Shown here piece after piece: positions 1,963 to 55,799 of a DNA stretch of 64,000 bases; within the stretch, counting starts at the first letter, position 1, and each line of letters starts with the position of its first letter. The notes under the pieces were generated by a model. That model was not told the origin of the DNA and made no database searches. It worked only from the letters and a program-made list of their open reading frames with translations. The stretch covers positions 1 through 64,000 of the IMG/VR virus record IMGVR_UViG_3300009104_001827; one strand, given 5' to 3'. A program made the position numbers and the translations under genes.

Positions 1963-2176
1963 CAACTTTGTAACGAAAAAAATCTCCCTTAGTAAATGAT
2001 TACCAAGTGTTTACGCATAAAAAAAAGTCGAGAATTGGTTTTTGCCCGTTTTTCCTCCGCACGACATGAAAAAAAACTTCTTTTTTTTCTCGTTGAATAC
2101 CAATGAGTTACGCATATGCTACTGCTTAAAATACGAATAAGCTCGTAAAATGTCAGATTTCTGTCATAATAAGGGT

Positions 2177-2482
2177 ATGAAAATTGAGAAAGACTTCTCC
2201 CACATCGCTGAGGCAATCGCCTTGGCTAACGCCAGCAACAACGCAGTTGCTCCACAGTTCGCTGACTTGCTCGCTGACCTACAAGGTCAAAAGCTTGCCG
2301 AAGATTTCACGGTTGAGCATGGCACGCAACACGCTTCAGATGATGAGGTGAAAGCCGAGTTCGTTTCCCTCGATGCAGTCGAGTCCGACAAGGACGACAT
2401 CGACGAGAACGACGAGAATCTCGTTGATATGGATTGCGTAAGCGGTTCATTCGCTGACCTTTTCGACACTATCGAAAGCTAA
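2177..2482 (+). CDS. Acidic early protein, paralog 1
   Basis: MKIEKDFSHIAEAIALANA..., near-identical to 6216..6515; leaderless start after CTGTCATAAT. Confidence 0.85.
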   Translation: MKIEKDFSHIAEAIALANASNNAVAPQFADLLADLQGQKLAEDFTVEHGTQHASDDEVKAEFVSLDAVESDKDDIDENDENLVDMDCVSGSFADLFDTIES

Positions 2483-3009: not shown

Positions 3010-3083
3010 GCTACTGAGTAGCAAAGACTTACGAGCCGGCCGGCAGCCCCTGTATACGTAACTCGTTGGTACTCATGCCCTTA
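3007..3083 (+). repeat. Bipartite element R1 (arm, GC core, arm)
   Basis: Arm 3007-3031, 27-bp core CGAGCCGGCCGGCAGCCCCTGTATACG, arm 3059-3083. Confidence 0.85.
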
Positions 3084-3123
3084 GCATACGAGTATAGTGC
3101 AAAACATTAGTTGAATCTTAGCC

Positions 3124-3158
3124 TTGACAAATGGCTCTTTCTGTGGTATCTTATAGGT
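3124..3158 (+). promoter_or_regulatory. Sigma70-type leaderless promoter (representative of many)
   Basis: TTGACA-N17-TATCTT with extended TG, then 6 nt to ATG 3159; same 35-nt -35-to-ATG spacing at 4640, 4892, 5441, 5953, 6181, 6954, 7595. Confidence 0.85.
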
Positions 3159-3575
3159 ATGAATAACAATAAGAACATAAACCTAGATGTGTTGAAGATA
3201 GTACTGGATGCAACCACTCCAGCCAACCTTGCGAAGATAAATGTTTCGGGTGACTTCAATCTAGTACCAACGCCATTGACTCGTGACCAAGCCTGTGCAG
3301 CTAAGCGTATGCACGCACGCTGGCAAGCTCACACTACTGGCAACACCTATGTGCTTTATGTTCAGAACAGAACTTGCGACCATGCCTTTAGGGTAGTAGG
3401 TCACGGCAAGAACCCTTGGCAGGCTGTGCTACGCTACTACAAGGGTCTTGATAACAAGGGCAGTTGGATATGGCAATGCACTAAGGTGGTTGCAGTATAC
3501 TCTTGCGTATGTGACAAGTCCACTCAGGCAGGCGATCTGCTCGCTGGTCAAGCTCAAGACAGAGCTCCTTGGTAG
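3159..3575 (+). CDS. Hypothetical early protein
   Basis: Start re-assigned to the promoter-proximal ATG; stop lies inside the R2 arm. Confidence 0.75.
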   Translation: MNNNKNINLDVLKIVLDATTPANLAKINVSGDFNLVPTPLTRDQACAAKRMHARWQAHTTGNTYVLYVQNRTCDHAFRVVGHGKNPWQAVLRYYKGLDNKGSWIWQCTKVVAVYSCVCDKSTQAGDLLAGQAQDRAPW

Positions 3576-5846: not shown

Positions 5847-5912
5847 TAGTCAACGACTTACGCGCCGGCGGGCCCCCGGCGTTAGCGTAACTCATTGAAG
5901 ACCAAGGAGTTA
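5836..5912 (+). repeat. Bipartite element R4
   Basis: Arm 5836-5860, core CGCGCCGGCGGGCCCCCGGCGTTAGCG, arm 5888-5912. Confidence 0.9.
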
Positions 5913-5987
5913 ACGTGAGAGAATCGTGCAAAACATTAGTTGAAAGTTAGCCTTGACAAACAGGTGTTTCTGTGGTATAGTATAGGT

Positions 5988-6161
5988 ATGATTAAAAACA
6001 AAGATGTAGTAGTAGACCGCAGAGGTCGCATTTTTCAAGTTGTCGATGCAGACTTTAAGACTGACCGACTAGGCAAACAAATCCTTTGCCGTTTGTACCG
6101 TTCGCAAAAGCGTTTCGCTTTCATGCCTTGGCAGGTAAAAAAGCATCCGTTTTTCTCTTGA
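5988..6161 (+). CDS. Small early protein
   Basis: Leaderless ATG 35 nt after TTGACA at 5953. Confidence 0.7.
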   Translation: MIKNKDVVVDRRGRIFQVVDADFKTDRLGKQILCRLYRSQKRFAFMPWQVKKHPFFS

Positions 6162-6215
6162 AAATAATTGAAAAAAAAACTTGACTTTTCCTTAAAAATA
6201 GATTAAATTGTAGAT

Positions 6216-6515
6216 ATGAAAATTGAAAAAGACCTCTCTCACATCGCCGAAGCTGTCGCTTTGGCTAACGCCAACGGAAACAAAGTTTCCGACCAGTTCG
6301 CTGACTTGCTCGCCGACCTACAAGGTCAAAAGCTTGCCGAAGACTTTACGGTTGAGCATGGAACGCAACACGCTTCAGATGATGAAGTGAAAGCCGAGTT
6401 CGTTTCTCTCGATGCAGTTGAAAATGACAACGAAGACGACGATTTCGACAATGATGAAAACCTCGTTGACATGAGTCAAATCTCTGGCTCGATGCGTGAA
6501 ATCTTTGGAGAGTAA
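6216..6515 (+). CDS. Acidic early protein, paralog 2
   Basis: Shares QFADLLADLQGQKLAEDFTVEHGTQHASDDEVKAEFVSLDAVE with 2177..2482. Confidence 0.85.
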   Translation: MKIEKDLSHIAEAVALANANGNKVSDQFADLLADLQGQKLAEDFTVEHGTQHASDDEVKAEFVSLDAVENDNEDDDFDNDENLVDMSQISGSMREIFGE

Positions 6516-6522
6516 AAAAATT

Positions 6523-6858
6523 ATGAGAAAAGTCACAGAACAAATCAAGCAAGCCTTTGAGCAAGGCGAATCTAAAAAAGTCGGAAACACCGAGACGGAT
6601 GGAACAAGCGTTTTCTTGCATGGGAATGAAATTGTTCGCCGTGATGTGAGCGGTTTGGTCTTTGCTACGCTCGCAGGTTGGAACACTCCAACCACGAGAG
6701 AAAGAGTCAACGGAATCACAGGAATGGGCTTTCATCAGGTCAACCATCAGGCTTGCCTAAATGGTGAACCGATTGACTCATCCGACTGGTTCGTCAAGAC
6801 TGCTCAAGGTGATTCGCAAGCGTTGCCACCACCGCCTAAGTCACTGACTGTCAGCTAG
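6523..6858 (+). CDS. Hypothetical phage protein
   Basis: MRKVTEQIK...AGWNTPTTRERVNG; stop lies inside the R5 arm. Confidence 0.75.
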   Translation: MRKVTEQIKQAFEQGESKKVGNTETDGTSVFLHGNEIVRRDVSGLVFATLAGWNTPTTRERVNGITGMGFHQVNHQACLNGEPIDSSDWFVKTAQGDSQALPPPPKSLTVS

Positions 6859-6913
6859 TTACGGGCCGGCGGGCCCCCGGCGTTAGCGTAACTCATTGAA
6901 AACCAAGGAGTTA
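6837..6913 (+). repeat. Bipartite element R5
   Basis: Arm 6837-6861, core differing from R4 at one base, arm 6889-6913. Confidence 0.9.
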
Positions 6914-6988
6914 GCGCGAGAGAATTGTGCAAAACGTTAAGCGAATCTTAGCCTTGACAAAAGGGCTTTTCTGTGGTATTGTATAGGT

Positions 6989-7489
6989 ATGATTAAGAGA
7001 AAAACTAAAGCTTTCGTTTTTGACTTTGACGACACTCTTGCGTTCACCGATGCAAGAGTTCATGTGCTGAGTCGGTTCAAGAGTCAAGTGGTCGCAAGCT
7101 TGACCCCTAAACAGTTCAATGATGTAAAATTAAAGGAAGGCGAAAGCTTCGACTTCTCCGACTTCGACAGAGCGAGCTTCATTCGTGACGGCAAACCTTC
7201 TAAGCTGATTGACTTAGCAAAAGAAGTTTTTTCTGAAGGTCATTCTGTGTTTATCTTAACTGCTCGCAACGATTGCGTTTCTTCTGCGATTGCTGAATGG
7301 CTTACAGACTTTGGAATCGTTGCAAGGGAAGTTCATTGCGTGGGCGAAAAAGGCACGGACATTGCAAAAGCAAAAAGACAAGTCTTGCTTGCAATCATTG
7401 AAAACTTTGACAAGGTTTGGTTTTTCGATGATGATGCTCGAAACATTGAGCTTGCCCAAGAGCTAAACCTTAAAGCTAAAAAAGTGTAA
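6989..7489 (+). CDS. HAD-superfamily phosphatase-like protein
   Basis: FDFDDTL (motif I), ILTAR (II), K (III), FFDD (IV). Confidence 0.8.
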   Translation: MIKRKTKAFVFDFDDTLAFTDARVHVLSRFKSQVVASLTPKQFNDVKLKEGESFDFSDFDRASFIRDGKPSKLIDLAKEVFSEGHSVFILTARNDCVSSAIAEWLTDFGIVAREVHCVGEKGTDIAKAKRQVLLAIIENFDKVWFFDDDARNIELAQELNLKAKKV

Positions 7490-8324: not shown

Positions 8325-8631
8325 TGACCCAGAATGATTCGAGATGAATATTTGACCCTATTTGGCTTCAAAAATCAAGTAATTTCTCTATTTCTATTTA
8401 ATTGATTATCAATAGTTTATAACTATTTTTATTCATTTGTAAAAAAGTGTTTGACTCAAAATGAGATTTAGTCTATTATAGTAGGCATAATGAAAAACGG
8501 AATAAGTCTCACCAAAAAGGAACTTCAAGAAATCATCGACCAAAATGTCGGTGACGCAAACGAGGGTTGTGTTCAGTCTCAACAGATTGTTGTCCACGCC
8601 CAATGGCTATTGGATAGGATTGCCAACCAAT

Positions 8632-8704
8632 GGGGATGATTGGATTCGATTTGCACTGCTTCATCGGGGCAAAGACTGCGGTTCAACTCCGCACATCTCC
8701 ACCA
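8632..8704 (+). ncRNA. Mini-tmRNA: tRNA-like domain only
   Basis: 5' GGGGAUGAUUGGAUUCGA; UUUGC/GCAAA helix; T-arm UGCGG-UUCAACU-CCGCA; acceptor GGGGAUG/CAUCUCC with G3.U70; ACCA end. Confidence 0.75.
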
Positions 8705-8717
8705 ATTTTTAAGAATT

Positions 8718-9038
8718 ATGAGTAAAAATAAAAACAAAAATATTGCACTAATCGACGAGAAATGGGAAGCAATTGGACATTCAATGAACATCTCAAACGA
8801 GGCTTGCTCAAGGTTATTCAATGAGGTTTTGATTCCGCTTTCTGGAATGCAAGGCAAATTGAAGTTTGCCACAGGCAAAAGTGTGGTCGATGAATCCGTT
8901 GACTGCATAGAAAACAAGTCAGTTCGCCGTACAGTTGCCGAAGTCAGAGACGGCATTTCAGGACTCCGTGAGATAGTCAAAGATATATCTCAAAGTCTCA
9001 GAGAGCAATCGGAAAAATACATTCGCGCAAATCCTTAA
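8718..9038 (+). CDS. Hypothetical protein (last + strand early gene)
   Basis: MSKNKNKNIAL...; stop lies inside the R7 arm. Confidence 0.7.
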   Translation: MSKNKNKNIALIDEKWEAIGHSMNISNEACSRLFNEVLIPLSGMQGKLKFATGKSVVDESVDCIENKSVRRTVAEVRDGISGLREIVKDISQSLREQSEKYIRANP

Positions 9039-12023: not shown

Positions 12024-12365
12024 TTAAAAGTCTGCTCCATAGGTTTCTTGCTCTCCAAAGCAACCGTAATCTTCGTCAGTCCCGAATCCTGCGGAAGTCA
12101 TGGCAGAATCAAAATCTCCATCCATACTTTCGTCGATATCTCTTTCGTCGTTGATGTGCCATTGCTCAACCTCTTCACAAGAAATCATCTTGCCGTGCCA
12201 ATCGTAAACGGCAAATTGGATTCCAAGATTAAGGTATTCGCCAGTTTGATTAGCCTCATCTATCAGGACTTCTGCTCGCATATAAGCTTGCTCAAGACCT
12301 TCACGATTTTTGTTCCAGAAATAGTCAAGCGTTTCATTTACAATTACTTCATATCTTTTTATCAT
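12024..12365 (-). CDS. Acidic hypothetical protein
   Basis: 113 aa, leaderless promoter, C-terminal SAGFGTDEDYG. Confidence 0.75.
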   Translation of the reverse strand: MIKRYEVIVNETLDYFWNKNREGLEQAYMRAEVLIDEANQTGEYLNLGIQFAVYDWHGKMISCEEVEQWHINDERDIDESMDGDFDSAMTSAGFGTDEDYGCFGEQETYGADF

Positions 12366-54639: not shown

Positions 54640-55011
54640 TCATTGCTTATTACTCTTGAGTACACGCTTAATTCGTATCTTTTCCCCGTGCATTAGTAAT
54701 AAGTTTAGAAATTTAGAAATTTTATTTCTCTGAAGCGTTTTTCGTGACTCCTTCATGGGAACACCATAGGTTCTCGTCGCTCCTAAGAAATCTTTATAAG
54801 CCCTATTGAAAGATTTGAAATCTTCCCGAGACAACTCTTGCTCGAGCGACAAAATATCCGCATGATTGCAAACTAAGGTTCCTATTTGAGCTACAATGGT
54901 TGTGTTGTCTTTTTTGGAAACAATCCTTTTTCCTTCCACAGTCGCGCCAATATTAGGCGCATCTCCTGGGGAATCTTTTGACTTGAAGAAGGACTTTAGT
55001 TTCTCGAACAT
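54640..55011 (-). CDS. Hypothetical protein
   Basis: 123 aa, starts 5 nt after the tmRNA 3' end. Confidence 0.65.
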   Translation of the reverse strand: MFEKLKSFFKSKDSPGDAPNIGATVEGKRIVSKKDNTTIVAQIGTLVCNHADILSLEQELSREDFKSFNRAYKDFLGATRTYGVPMKESRKTLQRNKISKFLNLLLMHGEKIRIKRVLKSNKQ

Positions 55012-55015
55012 AAAT

Positions 55016-55391
<376 letters not shown>

Positions 55392-55414
55392 AAAGGATTT
55401 TCCCTAGATTAATA

Positions 55415-55723
55415 TTACACCAAAGCAGCGGGAAGTTCTTCGGAAGCTTTCTCCGTGCTTTCTGTGGACGCCTGGTCCGAGGTTGTTGATGCCGCAGCCT
55501 CAGGAGATACCGAACGATACATCACGTAATCGGGCGCACGCTCGTTTTCTGTCTTGCCCTTATTGGAAAAGACTACTACCTTCACCTTTTCTGTTACCCC
55601 AGGCATGGTTTCGATTTCGACATGACCAGTGAGGTACTTCTGGCCTTTGCCCTGGCGTACCCACAAAGCTCCGAGCTCTCGTTCACGCCATTCTGAATTA
55701 GTGTTTTCTTTTGTTTCACTCAT
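55415..55723 (-). CDS. DUF736-like putative ssDNA-binding protein
   Basis: LGALW...YLTG...N..K.....PDY with an acidic tail. Confidence 0.55.
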   Translation of the reverse strand: MSETKENTNSEWRERELGALWVRQGKGQKYLTGHVEIETMPGVTEKVKVVVFSNKGKTENERAPDYVMYRSVSPEAAASTTSDQASTESTEKASEELPAALV

Positions 55724-55799
55724 AGTTTTTAATTGTTAAGGATATAGTATAGGTTATTTTGAATAGAATGTCAAGAACTTTTTTTGTGTAAATTGGGAT

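What the first reader, a model, noticed from the sequence alone, without database searches (positions are those of the whole stretch)
8632..8704. 73-nt mini-tmRNA with no mRNA-like domain in the early region
Seen: tmRNA-type 5' end (GGGGAUGAUUGGAUUCGA, no D-stem), G3.U70 alanine determinant, T-arm and ACCA end. The helix that normally leads to the tag region is closed by a 14-nt insert. A complete and different tmRNA is at 55016-55391, and the stems here are intact despite divergence from it, so this is not a simple att duplication. Established: the tRNA-like domain binds SmpB, EF-Tu and AlaRS, and TLD-only tmRNAs are known from some protist mitochondria. Inference: an SmpB decoy that blocks host trans-translation, or a tag-less ribosome-rescue RNA.
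Basis: partly seen in the sequence, partly recalled or inferred. Interest (0 to 1): 0.75.

Follow-up and report, generated by a model that had tools for sequence, protein, structure and literature searches.

The report
Phage mini-tmRNA lacking the tag
A 73-base gene in a 211-kb marine phage encodes only the tRNA-like half of tmRNA; it belongs to a widespread, almost undescribed family of phage RNAs that probably capture the host's ribosome-rescue protein SmpB.

Summary
Window 8632-8704 (+) is a complete tmRNA tRNA-like domain (TLD) and nothing more. It has a 7-bp acceptor stem with G3:U70, GGAUUCGA, a closed helix-2 stub, GAC, a T arm and ACCA. It scores above the Rfam tmRNA threshold. The window is part of a complete 211-kb marine phage that also carries a full, diverged tmRNA but no SmpB.

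It is not an isolated oddity. Pattern scans found 56 distinct TLD-only RNAs of 63-85 nt in viral contigs, metagenomes and a few phage-like regions of bacterial assemblies. All 17 modelled pairs are always paired, and 13 show compensatory changes. Many copies sit in phage tRNA arrays. In syntenic relatives the helix-2 hairpin is swapped while the TLD core is kept.

The kind is already known. Mycobacteriophage DS6A has a "TLD only" tmRNA, and a similar RNA is reported to inhibit E. coli tmRNA. I also found unannotated copies in cultured Streptomyces phages.

Most likely it is processed like a tRNA, alanylated, and competes with full tmRNA for host SmpB and stalled ribosomes, so tagging is suppressed. 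Tag-less rescue is the main rival. Expression, SmpB binding and charging are untested: the RNA-seq data were uninformative. Verdict: new member of a known kind, moderately interesting.

The parts
8451..8479 (+). Sigma-70-like promoter TTGACT-17-TATTAT that would drive ORF49, the mini-tmRNA and ORF106
   Evidence: 10 of 12 matches. Conserved in relatives L188, L158 and L197. Consensus match only; not shown to be active.
8490..8639 (+). ORF49, a 49-aa protein gene of unknown function. Its stop codon UGA (8637-8639) lies inside the 5' acceptor strand of the mini-tmRNA.
   Evidence: Conserved in four syntenic relatives; against L158 there are 15 synonymous and 4 non-synonymous codon differences. 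No Pfam, PHROG or Atlas lead.
8632..8704 (+). 73-nt TLD-only tmRNA (mini-tmRNA). Acceptor 8632-8638/8694-8700 with G3:U70; GGAUUCGA 8642-8649; helix-2 stub 8650-8673; GAC 8674-8676; T arm 8677-8693; ACCA 8701-8704.
   Evidence: Rfam RF00023 56.5 bits, above the gathering score of 47. Own covariance model 72.4 bits. Covariation in the family. Anatomy.
8705..8708 (+). AUUU directly after CCA, possibly part of a 3' processing signal
   Evidence: AUU is invariant in all 10 family members aligned and the fourth base is U in 9 of them, although their further flanks are unrelated. AUUU also follows the CCA of the full tmRNA. The processing role is inference.
8718..9038 (+). ORF106, the downstream cistron of the same putative transcript; function unknown
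   Evidence: Found only in the same phage.
55016..55391 (-). Complete one-piece phage tmRNA (tag ANNIVRFEDFTACGEELALAA). It lies in a similar promoter-ORF-RNA-ORF layout, with the promoter at 55774-55746.
   Evidence: Listed because it shares the cofactor SmpB with the mini and bears on the mechanism.

Best explanation
It is a real phage gene for a tmRNA reduced to its tRNA-like domain.

Proposed pathway:
- It is transcribed by host RNA polymerase from the promoter at 8451-8479, together with two small ORFs.
- It is cut out like a tRNA: RNase P at 8631/8632, and 3' trimming to the encoded CCA.
- It is charged with alanine by host AlaRS.
- It is bound by host SmpB and EF-Tu. The phage has no SmpB of its own.

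It then competes with full-length tmRNA for SmpB and for ribosomes stalled on non-stop mRNAs. It has no resume codon, tag frame or stop codon. A ribosome that takes it can therefore add at most one alanine and cannot add the degradation tag. The net effect is suppression of the tagging arm of trans-translation during infection.

Shown here: the anatomy, the conservation and covariation, and phage-borne spread of the family. Taken from the literature: TLD-only RNAs bind SmpB, accept the nascent peptide in vitro, and inhibit tmRNA in E. coli. Inferred: expression, processing, charging, and the benefit to the phage.
For: 1. It has complete TLD anatomy and an Rfam score above threshold, and there is no room for a tag frame.

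2. The family holds 56 distinct members. All 962 pair cells form standard pairs, and 13 of 17 pairs show compensatory change. There are 256 double-change cells against 77 +/- 6 in shuffles, and slid controls are only 50-65% paired. RNAalifold finds the same fold de novo.

3. In relatives whose flanks are about 95% identical, the helix-2 hairpin is replaced by a different, shorter hairpin while the TLD core is kept. In other relatives the flanks are unrelated but the RNA is about 90% conserved.

4. Members lie on the same strand inside phage tRNA arrays and never opposite to them. 19 of 75 loci with enough flank have a same-strand tRNA within 300 nt. This fits tRNA-like expression and processing.

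5. Alanine identity elements (G1-G3, U70-C72, A73) are invariant while acceptor pairs 4-7 covary. This also holds in sets where the search did not force them: 10 of 10 families, and DS6A, BRock and LuckySocke.

6. The unforced junction GAC is conserved: A in 57/57, G in 49/57, C in 50/57.

7. Literature. The crystallised SmpB-TLD complex used 25 + 34 nt joined by a tetraloop, the architecture of the 64-nt natural members (PMC3985003). Peptidyl transfer to a TLD-only RNA has been reported (PMC3895274, citing Shimizu and Ueda 2006). A DS6A-like TLD RNA inhibits tmRNA in E. coli (PMC4131195, PMC11915505).

8. The phage encodes no SmpB, so host SmpB would be the partner.
Against: - The same phage carries a complete tmRNA behind a near-consensus sigma-70-type promoter. 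A general SmpB competitor would also inhibit that RNA, which sits uneasily with pure inhibition.
- There is no transcript evidence. One marine metatranscriptome has contigs on neighbouring sequence but none over 8632-8704.
- SmpB binding, charging and ribosome entry were not tested; the complex prediction was not run by the tool.
- The host is unknown.
- According to the literature summary, inhibition in E. coli did not need a chargeable RNA. The conserved alanine identity is therefore not explained by titration alone.
- Most family members were found with a pattern that forced part of the TLD.
Confidence: 0.45

Rival explanations
1. Tag-less ribosome rescue is the selected function. Ala-mini-tmRNA with SmpB frees ribosomes stalled on broken mRNAs, for example after host or phage RNase action. 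It does so without spending time on a tag frame and without marking phage proteins for proteolysis. Release of the peptidyl-RNA would depend on host factors (drop-off with Pth, or ArfA/ArfB-type release). The mini and the phage's full tmRNA would together raise rescue capacity.
For: - Alanine identity elements and the encoded CCA are invariant.
- It coexists with a full phage tmRNA instead of replacing it.
- MLD-less tmRNAs are retained together with SmpB in some mitochondria and plastids (PMC11915505).
- Peptidyl transfer to TLD-only RNA occurs in vitro (PMC3895274).
Against: - No mechanism is known that terminates and releases after transfer to a TLD-only RNA.
- The phage encodes no Pth or RF-1/ArfB-like protein.
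- The only in vivo test reported (E. coli, per PMC4131195 and PMC11915505) showed inhibition of tmRNA, not help.
- Three complete cultured phage genomes have the mini without a full tmRNA.
Confidence: 0.25
2. It is a cis-acting tRNA-like processing signal. RNase P and 3' processing at the element cut the ORF49-ORF106 transcript. Because the ORF49 stop codon lies inside the acceptor stem, processing leaves a non-stop ORF49 message. The element would then mainly regulate its neighbours.
For: - The ORF49 stop UGA occupies positions 6-8 of the RNA, and this overlap is conserved in four relatives.
- 22 of 56 distinct members have an ORF of at least 40 aa ending within -12 to +5 nt of their 5' end.
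Against: - The same RNA is conserved in unrelated flanks and inside tRNA arrays with no ORF to regulate.
- tmRNA-specific features (GGAUUCGA, GAC, G3:U70, A73) are not needed for an RNase P site, yet they are invariant.
Confidence: 0.08
3. It is a decoy for a host factor other than SmpB. Candidates are a defence nuclease or sensor that recognises tmRNA or tRNA-like RNAs, or AlaRS/EF-Tu themselves.
For: - Phage tRNA genes are known counter-measures to tRNA-cleaving defences (background cited in PMC10542128).
- Defence systems with SmpB-like domains have been predicted (PMC11090510).
- The element is often part of phage tRNA arrays.
Against: There is no direct evidence. The conserved positions are those of the SmpB/AlaRS-binding TLD, so the simplest partner is SmpB.
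Confidence: 0.07
4. It is a non-functional remnant: an internally deleted tmRNA pseudogene or an attachment-site fragment.
For: It could formally arise by deleting 310 central positions of a tmRNA gene.
Against: - Att fragments contain only the 3' part, whereas this has both acceptor strands.
- It is about 25% diverged from the phage's own tmRNA TLD, with compensatory changes.
- The family shows 100% pairing with extensive covariation, and the RNA is conserved amid unrelated flanks.
Confidence: 0.03

Closest known systems
Mycobacteriophage DS6A 'TLD only' tmRNA (JN698994 28478-28560)
   Same: It is phage-encoded and consists of a TLD with a closed helix-2 stub and G3:U70. It has no tag frame and sits just after an ORF stop. 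It is listed in PMC4131195 and PMC11915505. My model built from marine members detects it (39 bits).
   Different: DS6A has GGUGGUCGA instead of GGAUUCGA, no encoded CCA, and falls below the Rfam threshold (43.2 bits). It is in a temperate 60-kb actinophage with no full tmRNA. The window's RNA is in a 211-kb marine phage that also has a full tmRNA. Beyond the common TLD, sequence similarity is seen only for L015, BRock and LuckySocke, not for the window's RNA.
MLD-less organellar tmRNAs (jakobid and oomycete mitochondria; about 65-bp plastid forms in Mallomonadaceae)
   Same: They are reduced to the TLD, have no tag reading frame, and are kept together with SmpB (PMC11915505, PMC4131195).
   Different: These are the organelle's only tmRNA, inherited vertically. 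Here the RNA is an extra gene of a virus whose host presumably has its own tmRNA.
Laboratory TLD constructs used for SmpB co-crystals and in vitro trans-translation
   Same: They have nearly the same design: 5' 25 nt and 3' 34 nt joined by a tetraloop (PMC3985003). They bind SmpB and accept the peptide (PMC3895274).
   Different: They are man-made, whereas the phage versions are natural and covary. The window's copy has a longer stub: 9 pairs including an A.G mismatch, with a hexaloop.
Full-length phage tmRNAs (Bxz1-type mycobacteriophages, Bacillus phage G; window 55016-55391)
   Same: They are phage-borne members of the tmRNA family and depend on host SmpB.
   Different: They keep the tag frame and pseudoknots, and the mini has neither.
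tRNA-Ala
   Same: It shares the acceptor stem with G3:U70, A73, CCA and the T arm.
   Different: The mini has no D stem and no anticodon arm. ARAGORN does not call it, and the tmRNA-specific GGAUUCGA and GAC are present.

Membership tests
tmRNA (Rfam RF00023) | Score at or above the curated gathering threshold | tested here: met
   56.5 bits against 47; 47.9 bits in the local scan.
tmRNA (Rfam RF00023) | tRNA-like domain: 7-bp acceptor with G3:U70, A73-CCA, T arm, and a D-loop analogue GGAUUCGA without a D stem | tested here: met
   all pairs are standard.
tmRNA (Rfam RF00023) | mRNA-like domain with resume codon, tag reading frame and stop codon | tested here: not met
   Only 14 nt close helix 2. 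ARAGORN finds no tag, and 310 model positions are deleted. The permuted model gives only 16.9 bits, E 0.16.
tmRNA (Rfam RF00023) | Pseudoknot-rich body | tested here: not met
   Absent; the RNA is 73 nt in total.
tmRNA (Rfam RF00023) | Binds SmpB, is alanylated, and enters stalled ribosomes | not testable with these tools
Only the sequence determinants are present.
Phage TLD-only tmRNA (DS6A type) | Encoded by a phage | tested here: met
   The 211-kb IMG/VR record has a CheckV completeness of 100%. It encodes terminase, DnaB, RNR and RIIA.
Phage TLD-only tmRNA (DS6A type) | TLD with helix 2 closed after a short stub, 60-85 nt, no tag frame | tested here: met
Phage TLD-only tmRNA (DS6A type) | Inhibits endogenous tmRNA when expressed | not testable with these tools
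   Known only from the literature for a DS6A-like RNA (PMC4131195, PMC11915505).
Phage TLD-only tmRNA (DS6A type) | Conserved as a structured RNA across phages | tested here: met
   57 sequences, 100% of cells paired, 13 of 17 pairs compensatory; RNAalifold agrees.
tRNA | Anticodon arm and D arm | tested here: not met
   There is no ARAGORN call, and the anatomy has neither arm.
Prophage att-site copy of the tmRNA 3' end | Only the 3' part of the gene, near-identical to the resident tmRNA, same strand at the island border | tested here: not met
   Both halves are present, on the opposite strand, 46 kb away from the full tmRNA and about 25% diverged from its TLD.

The most novel reading that the evidence does not exclude
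Mini-tmRNAs are a widespread, so far unrecognised class of phage RNAs that take over the host's SmpB-dependent rescue pathway. They might serve as tag-less rescue or as a counter-measure to defences that cut mRNAs or stall ribosomes.

In this phage the mini would work as a pair with a phage-made full tmRNA. Its own excision from the ORF49 message would remove that ORF's stop codon, so the locus would make a non-stop substrate for the pathway it manipulates.
Probability: 0.15. Interest if true: 0.8.

Novelty: new member of a known kind. Interest (0 to 1): 0.55.

Why it matters
Trans-translation is the main bacterial ribosome-rescue and protein quality-control pathway, and it is an antibiotic target. 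In the papers I could read, one phage (DS6A) is the only recorded phage with a tmRNA cut down to the SmpB-binding domain.

This window and its relatives show that such RNAs are common in uncultivated phages from sea water, sludge and the rumen. They are under strong structural selection and keep the alanine identity. They also exist, unannotated, in cultured Streptomyces phages that can be tested directly.

This turns a curiosity into a testable general question: do phages switch off, or re-route, host ribosome rescue with a 64-85-nt RNA? The phage here is the only one seen with both the mini and a full tmRNA, and no current model explains that combination.

Tried and rejected
- **Mis-specified scan.** The viral-contig scan used 13 N where 11 were needed, so its three hits are irrelevant.
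- **Relaxed scan.** Most of its 120 rows are 3' halves of tRNA-Ser(CGA) at prophage ends or ordinary tRNAs. I removed them by requiring acceptor pairing.
- **Minimum-free-energy folding.** It is uninformative. The MFE (-23.2 kcal/mol, z -1.96) keeps the acceptor stem but not the T arm. The TLD fold is 1.8 kcal/mol higher. Folding in transcript context gives z -0.26.
- **RNA evidence.** Two run searches and one read laying found DNA holders, plus one metatranscriptome with contigs on neighbouring sequence only. This is evidence in neither direction.
- **Complex prediction with E. coli SmpB.** The tool does not score RNA-protein pairs, so nothing was folded and it is no evidence.
- **Neighbouring proteins.** They give no functional lead.
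- **Host.** Not identified. There is no psbA, and the nearest cultured terminase is 27% identical. From memory only, the tag start ANNIVRF resembles cyanobacterial tags; this was not tested.
- **BLAST of the mini against cultured phages.** It found only the 3' pieces of permuted tmRNAs or of tRNA-Ala.
- **Phabba.** The extra hit is not a mini.
- **Relatives of the full tmRNA.** A scan for its tag found only the same phage.
- **Co-occurrence.** Mini plus full tmRNA could not be assessed in most relatives, because their contigs are fragments or are not held.
- **Mao et al. 2009.** The paper is not held. Its result is cited second-hand.

Full report
**1. What is at 8632-8704**

The sequence reads, 5' to 3':

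| Element | Coordinates |
|---|---|
| Acceptor strand GGGGAUG | 8632-8638 |
| Linker AUU | 8639-8641 |
| GGAUUCGA | 8642-8649 |
| Stem strand UUUGC | 8650-8654 |
| 14 nt ACUGCUUCAUCGGG | 8655-8668 |
| GCAAA | 8669-8673 |
| GAC | 8674-8676 |
| T arm UGCGG-UUCAACU-CCGCA | 8677-8693 |
| Acceptor strand CAUCUCC | 8694-8700 |
| ACCA | 8701-8704 |

All acceptor and T-stem positions pair, and the third acceptor pair is G:U. The 14 nt add three more pairs after an A.G mismatch and end in a hexaloop, so helix 2 is simply capped.

- Rfam's tmRNA model aligns it end to end with the 310 central positions deleted. It scores 56.5 bits (gathering score 47, E 1.7e-19).
- ARAGORN calls nothing there.
- The permuted-tmRNA model does not fit (16.9 bits, E 0.16).
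- A TLD pattern occurs once in the window and never in 100 shuffles.

**2. Where it sits**

The window is the first 64 kb of a 211,117-bp IMG/VR virus record rated 100% complete. The record encodes a large terminase, DnaB-like helicase, ribonucleotide reductase and RIIA. Its nearest cultured terminase is only 27% identical, so it is an uncultivated jumbo phage. Sequencing runs that hold it are marine.

The phage also has four tRNAs and a complete one-piece tmRNA at 55016-55391 (-), with tag ANNIVRFEDFTACGEELALAA. It has no SmpB, Pth or RF-1/ArfB-type gene. A 99.6%-identical contig from another sample carries both RNAs too.

The two TLDs differ in the acceptor stem (A5:U against G5:C) and in three T-stem pairs. 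The mini is on the other strand, 46 kb away. It is neither an att copy nor a fresh duplicate.

**3. Local layout**

- A sigma-70-like promoter (TTGACT-17-TATTAT, 8451-8479) precedes a 49-codon ORF (8490-8639).
- The ORF's stop codon UGA is positions 6-8 of the RNA.
- The next ORF starts 14 nt after the CCA (8718-9038).
- ORF49 is a real gene. Four relatives keep it, and against L158 there are 15 synonymous and 4 non-synonymous codon differences.
- The full tmRNA has the same layout: promoter 55774-55746, a 102-codon ORF, the RNA, then a 123-codon ORF.
- By inference, RNase P cleavage at the 5' end of the mini would leave the ORF49 message without its stop codon.

**4. It is one of a family**

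An exact pattern for a closed TLD found 12 loci in viral contigs. A pattern that left the acceptor stem and discriminator free found three further families, L054, L075 and L104. A third pattern found 108 metagenome loci and 12 loci in bacterial assemblies.

After requiring acceptor pairing there are 64 distinct sequences, 56 of them with 7/7 pairs, ranging from 63 to 85 nt. All those tested exceed the Rfam tmRNA threshold.

I built a covariance model from eight 64-nt members and aligned 57 sequences. The result:

| Measure | Value |
|---|---|
| Pair cells forming standard pairs | 962 of 962 |
| Pairs with compensatory changes | 13 of 17 |
| Double-change cells | 256 |
| Double-change cells in shuffles | 77 +/- 6 (0 of 500 shuffles reach the observed value) |
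| Paired when partners are slid | 50-65% |

The five helix-2 pairs, which no search pattern constrained, all covary. RNAalifold on 16 close relatives predicts the same three helices by itself, with 7 covarying pairs. The unpaired GAC junction, also unconstrained, is nearly invariant.

Caveats:
- The patterns fixed GGAUUCGA, two T-stem pairs and, in the largest scan, U70-C72, A73 and CCA.
- I filtered on acceptor pairing.
- The alignment was fitted to the model.

**5. Evidence from close relatives**

Contigs L188, L158, L197 and L194 are syntenic with window 6.3-20.8 kb at 80-97% identity. They have the RNA in the same place, after ORF49. In L188, L158 and L197 the long hairpin is replaced by a shorter, different one (CUUGCU.../...AGYAAG) while every TLD element is kept.

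In L204, L213, L155, L256 and L179 the flanks are unrelated but the RNA is about 90% identical. In L204 and L213 it is followed directly by tRNA genes. The three bases after CCA (AUU) are invariant in all ten, and a fourth U follows in nine.

Across all loci with enough flank, 19 of 75 have a same-strand tRNA within 300 nt and none has only an opposite-strand one. One copy lies inside a 20-tRNA array.

Only 3-5 hits occur in 185,579 species genomes, and the one I examined lies beside terminase, portal and protease genes. These are phage genes for a stable, tRNA-like RNA.

**6. Alanine identity**

In every member, G1-G3 with U70-C72 and A73 are invariant, while acceptor pairs 4-7 change with compensation. 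This also holds where the search did not impose it:
- ten of ten families in the relaxed scan;
- the three cultured-phage copies found by model or BLAST: DS6A, BRock and LuckySocke.

These positions are the AlaRS identity set (established knowledge; G3:U70 is noted in PMC3985003). SmpB binding does not need them. Their conservation suggests the RNA is charged.

**7. What is already known**

- The tmRNA database papers list mycobacteriophage DS6A as 'TLD only'. They state that a similar molecule, chargeable or not, strongly inhibits tmRNA in E. coli, perhaps by titrating SmpB (PMC4131195, PMC11915505, citing Mao et al. 2009, which I could not read).
- I located the DS6A RNA at JN698994 28478-28560, 10 nt after the gp33 stop. 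It is unannotated in the record.
- L015 shares DS6A's central motif.
- BLAST with L015 found unannotated copies in Streptomyces phages BRock (KX925554 97140-97220, 64.5 bits) and LuckySocke (OR725497 17977-18057, 57.1 bits), both in tRNA arrays.
- These three complete genomes have no full tmRNA.
- MLD-less tmRNAs also exist in some mitochondria and plastids (PMC11915505).
- The SmpB co-crystal used a 25 + 34-nt TLD joined by a tetraloop (PMC3985003), and peptidyl transfer to a TLD-only RNA has been reported (PMC3895274).
- Full-text searches found no description of the marine family.

**8. Mechanism**

The best-supported account is as follows.
- The RNA is made early by host polymerase, trimmed like a tRNA, and alanylated.
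- It is bound by host SmpB and EF-Tu.
- It competes with full tmRNA for SmpB and for stalled ribosomes.
- Because it has no tag frame, tagging is suppressed.

I put this at 0.45. The main rival (0.25) is that tag-less rescue itself is the benefit. That reading fits the coexistence with a full phage tmRNA better, but it lacks a known release step, and the phage supplies none. Minor rivals are a cis processing signal (0.08), a decoy for another host factor (0.07) and a remnant (0.03).

Expression, processing, charging and SmpB binding are all inferred.

**9. Verdict**

The functional idea is plausible and has a published precedent. It is a new member of a known but barely documented kind.

What goes beyond the papers I could read:
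- the size and covariation of the family;
- its presence in cultured Streptomyces phages;
- the ORF-stop overlap;
- a phage that carries both forms.

Interest is 0.55.

Noticed in passing
window 54640-55774 (-): The complete phage tmRNA sits in a promoter-ORF-RNA-ORF layout like that of the mini. It has a near-consensus promoter TTGACA-17-TATACT at 55774-55746, a 102-codon ORF ending 24 nt before the RNA, and a 123-codon ORF starting 5 nt after its CCA. The 21-residue tag ends in the usual LALAA. From memory only, its start ANNIVRF resembles cyanobacterial tags.
   Followed up: partly
window 8631-8639: The ORF49 stop codon UGA lies inside the acceptor stem of the mini-tmRNA, and this is conserved in four relatives. 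Maturation of the RNA would leave a non-stop ORF49 message. L013 and L164 show similar overlaps, and 22 of 56 family members abut an ORF end.
   Followed up: partly
window 12052-12140: An element of about 89 nt recurs at 82-89% identity in many short contigs that also carry a mini-tmRNA (L155, L244, L206, L252, L242, L213, L204, L198, L208, L008). Their other sequence is diverged. In the window it lies within the ORF listed at 12024-12365 (-), near its 3' end.
   Followed up: no
window 2176-2431, 3022-3172, 5849-5995, 6215-6473, 6850-6996: There are repeated segments within the plus-strand block of small ORFs. 5849-5995 resembles 6850-6996 (87%) and 3022-3172 (75%). 2176-2431 resembles 6215-6473 (83%). 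They may be paralogous small genes or repeated regulatory modules.
   Followed up: no
L132 1457-1678 (HQ615693 88334-88555), L133 1426-1746 (OR529408 98570-98890), L265 919-1310 (KU245542 54019-54410): Three cultured phages carry two-piece (permuted) tmRNA genes that are not annotated in their records: Synechococcus phage S-CRM01, Stenotrophomonas phage BUCTxx99 and Pseudomonas phage SM1. All score above the gathering score of Rfam's permuted-tmRNA model (RF04321: 82.5, 100.1 and 118.6 bits against 47).
   Followed up: partly
L263 1491-1571 (KX925554 97140-97220), L264 1501-1581 (OR725497 17977-18057): There are unannotated TLD-only tmRNAs in the tRNA arrays of cultured Streptomyces phages BRock and LuckySocke. 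Their complete genomes have no full tmRNA. They are tractable systems for testing function.
   Followed up: yes
L008 5513-5638 (-): A 126-nt match to the tRNA model (47 bits) lies 27 nt upstream of the mini-tmRNA of a related phage. ARAGORN does not call it. It may be an intron-containing or otherwise unusual tRNA.
   Followed up: no
outside the window: G000:C1 185390-205156 (-): The phage has a single open reading frame of 6,589 codons, and others of 3,810 and 3,032 codons.
   Followed up: no
window 6989-7489 (+): About 1.1 kb upstream of the mini-tmRNA is a HAD-family phosphatase ORF. It has weak similarity to the phosphatase domain of polynucleotide kinase-phosphatase (PHROG 415, E 1e-14; Pfam hits below threshold). 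This is a possible RNA-repair link, but it is unproven.
   Followed up: no
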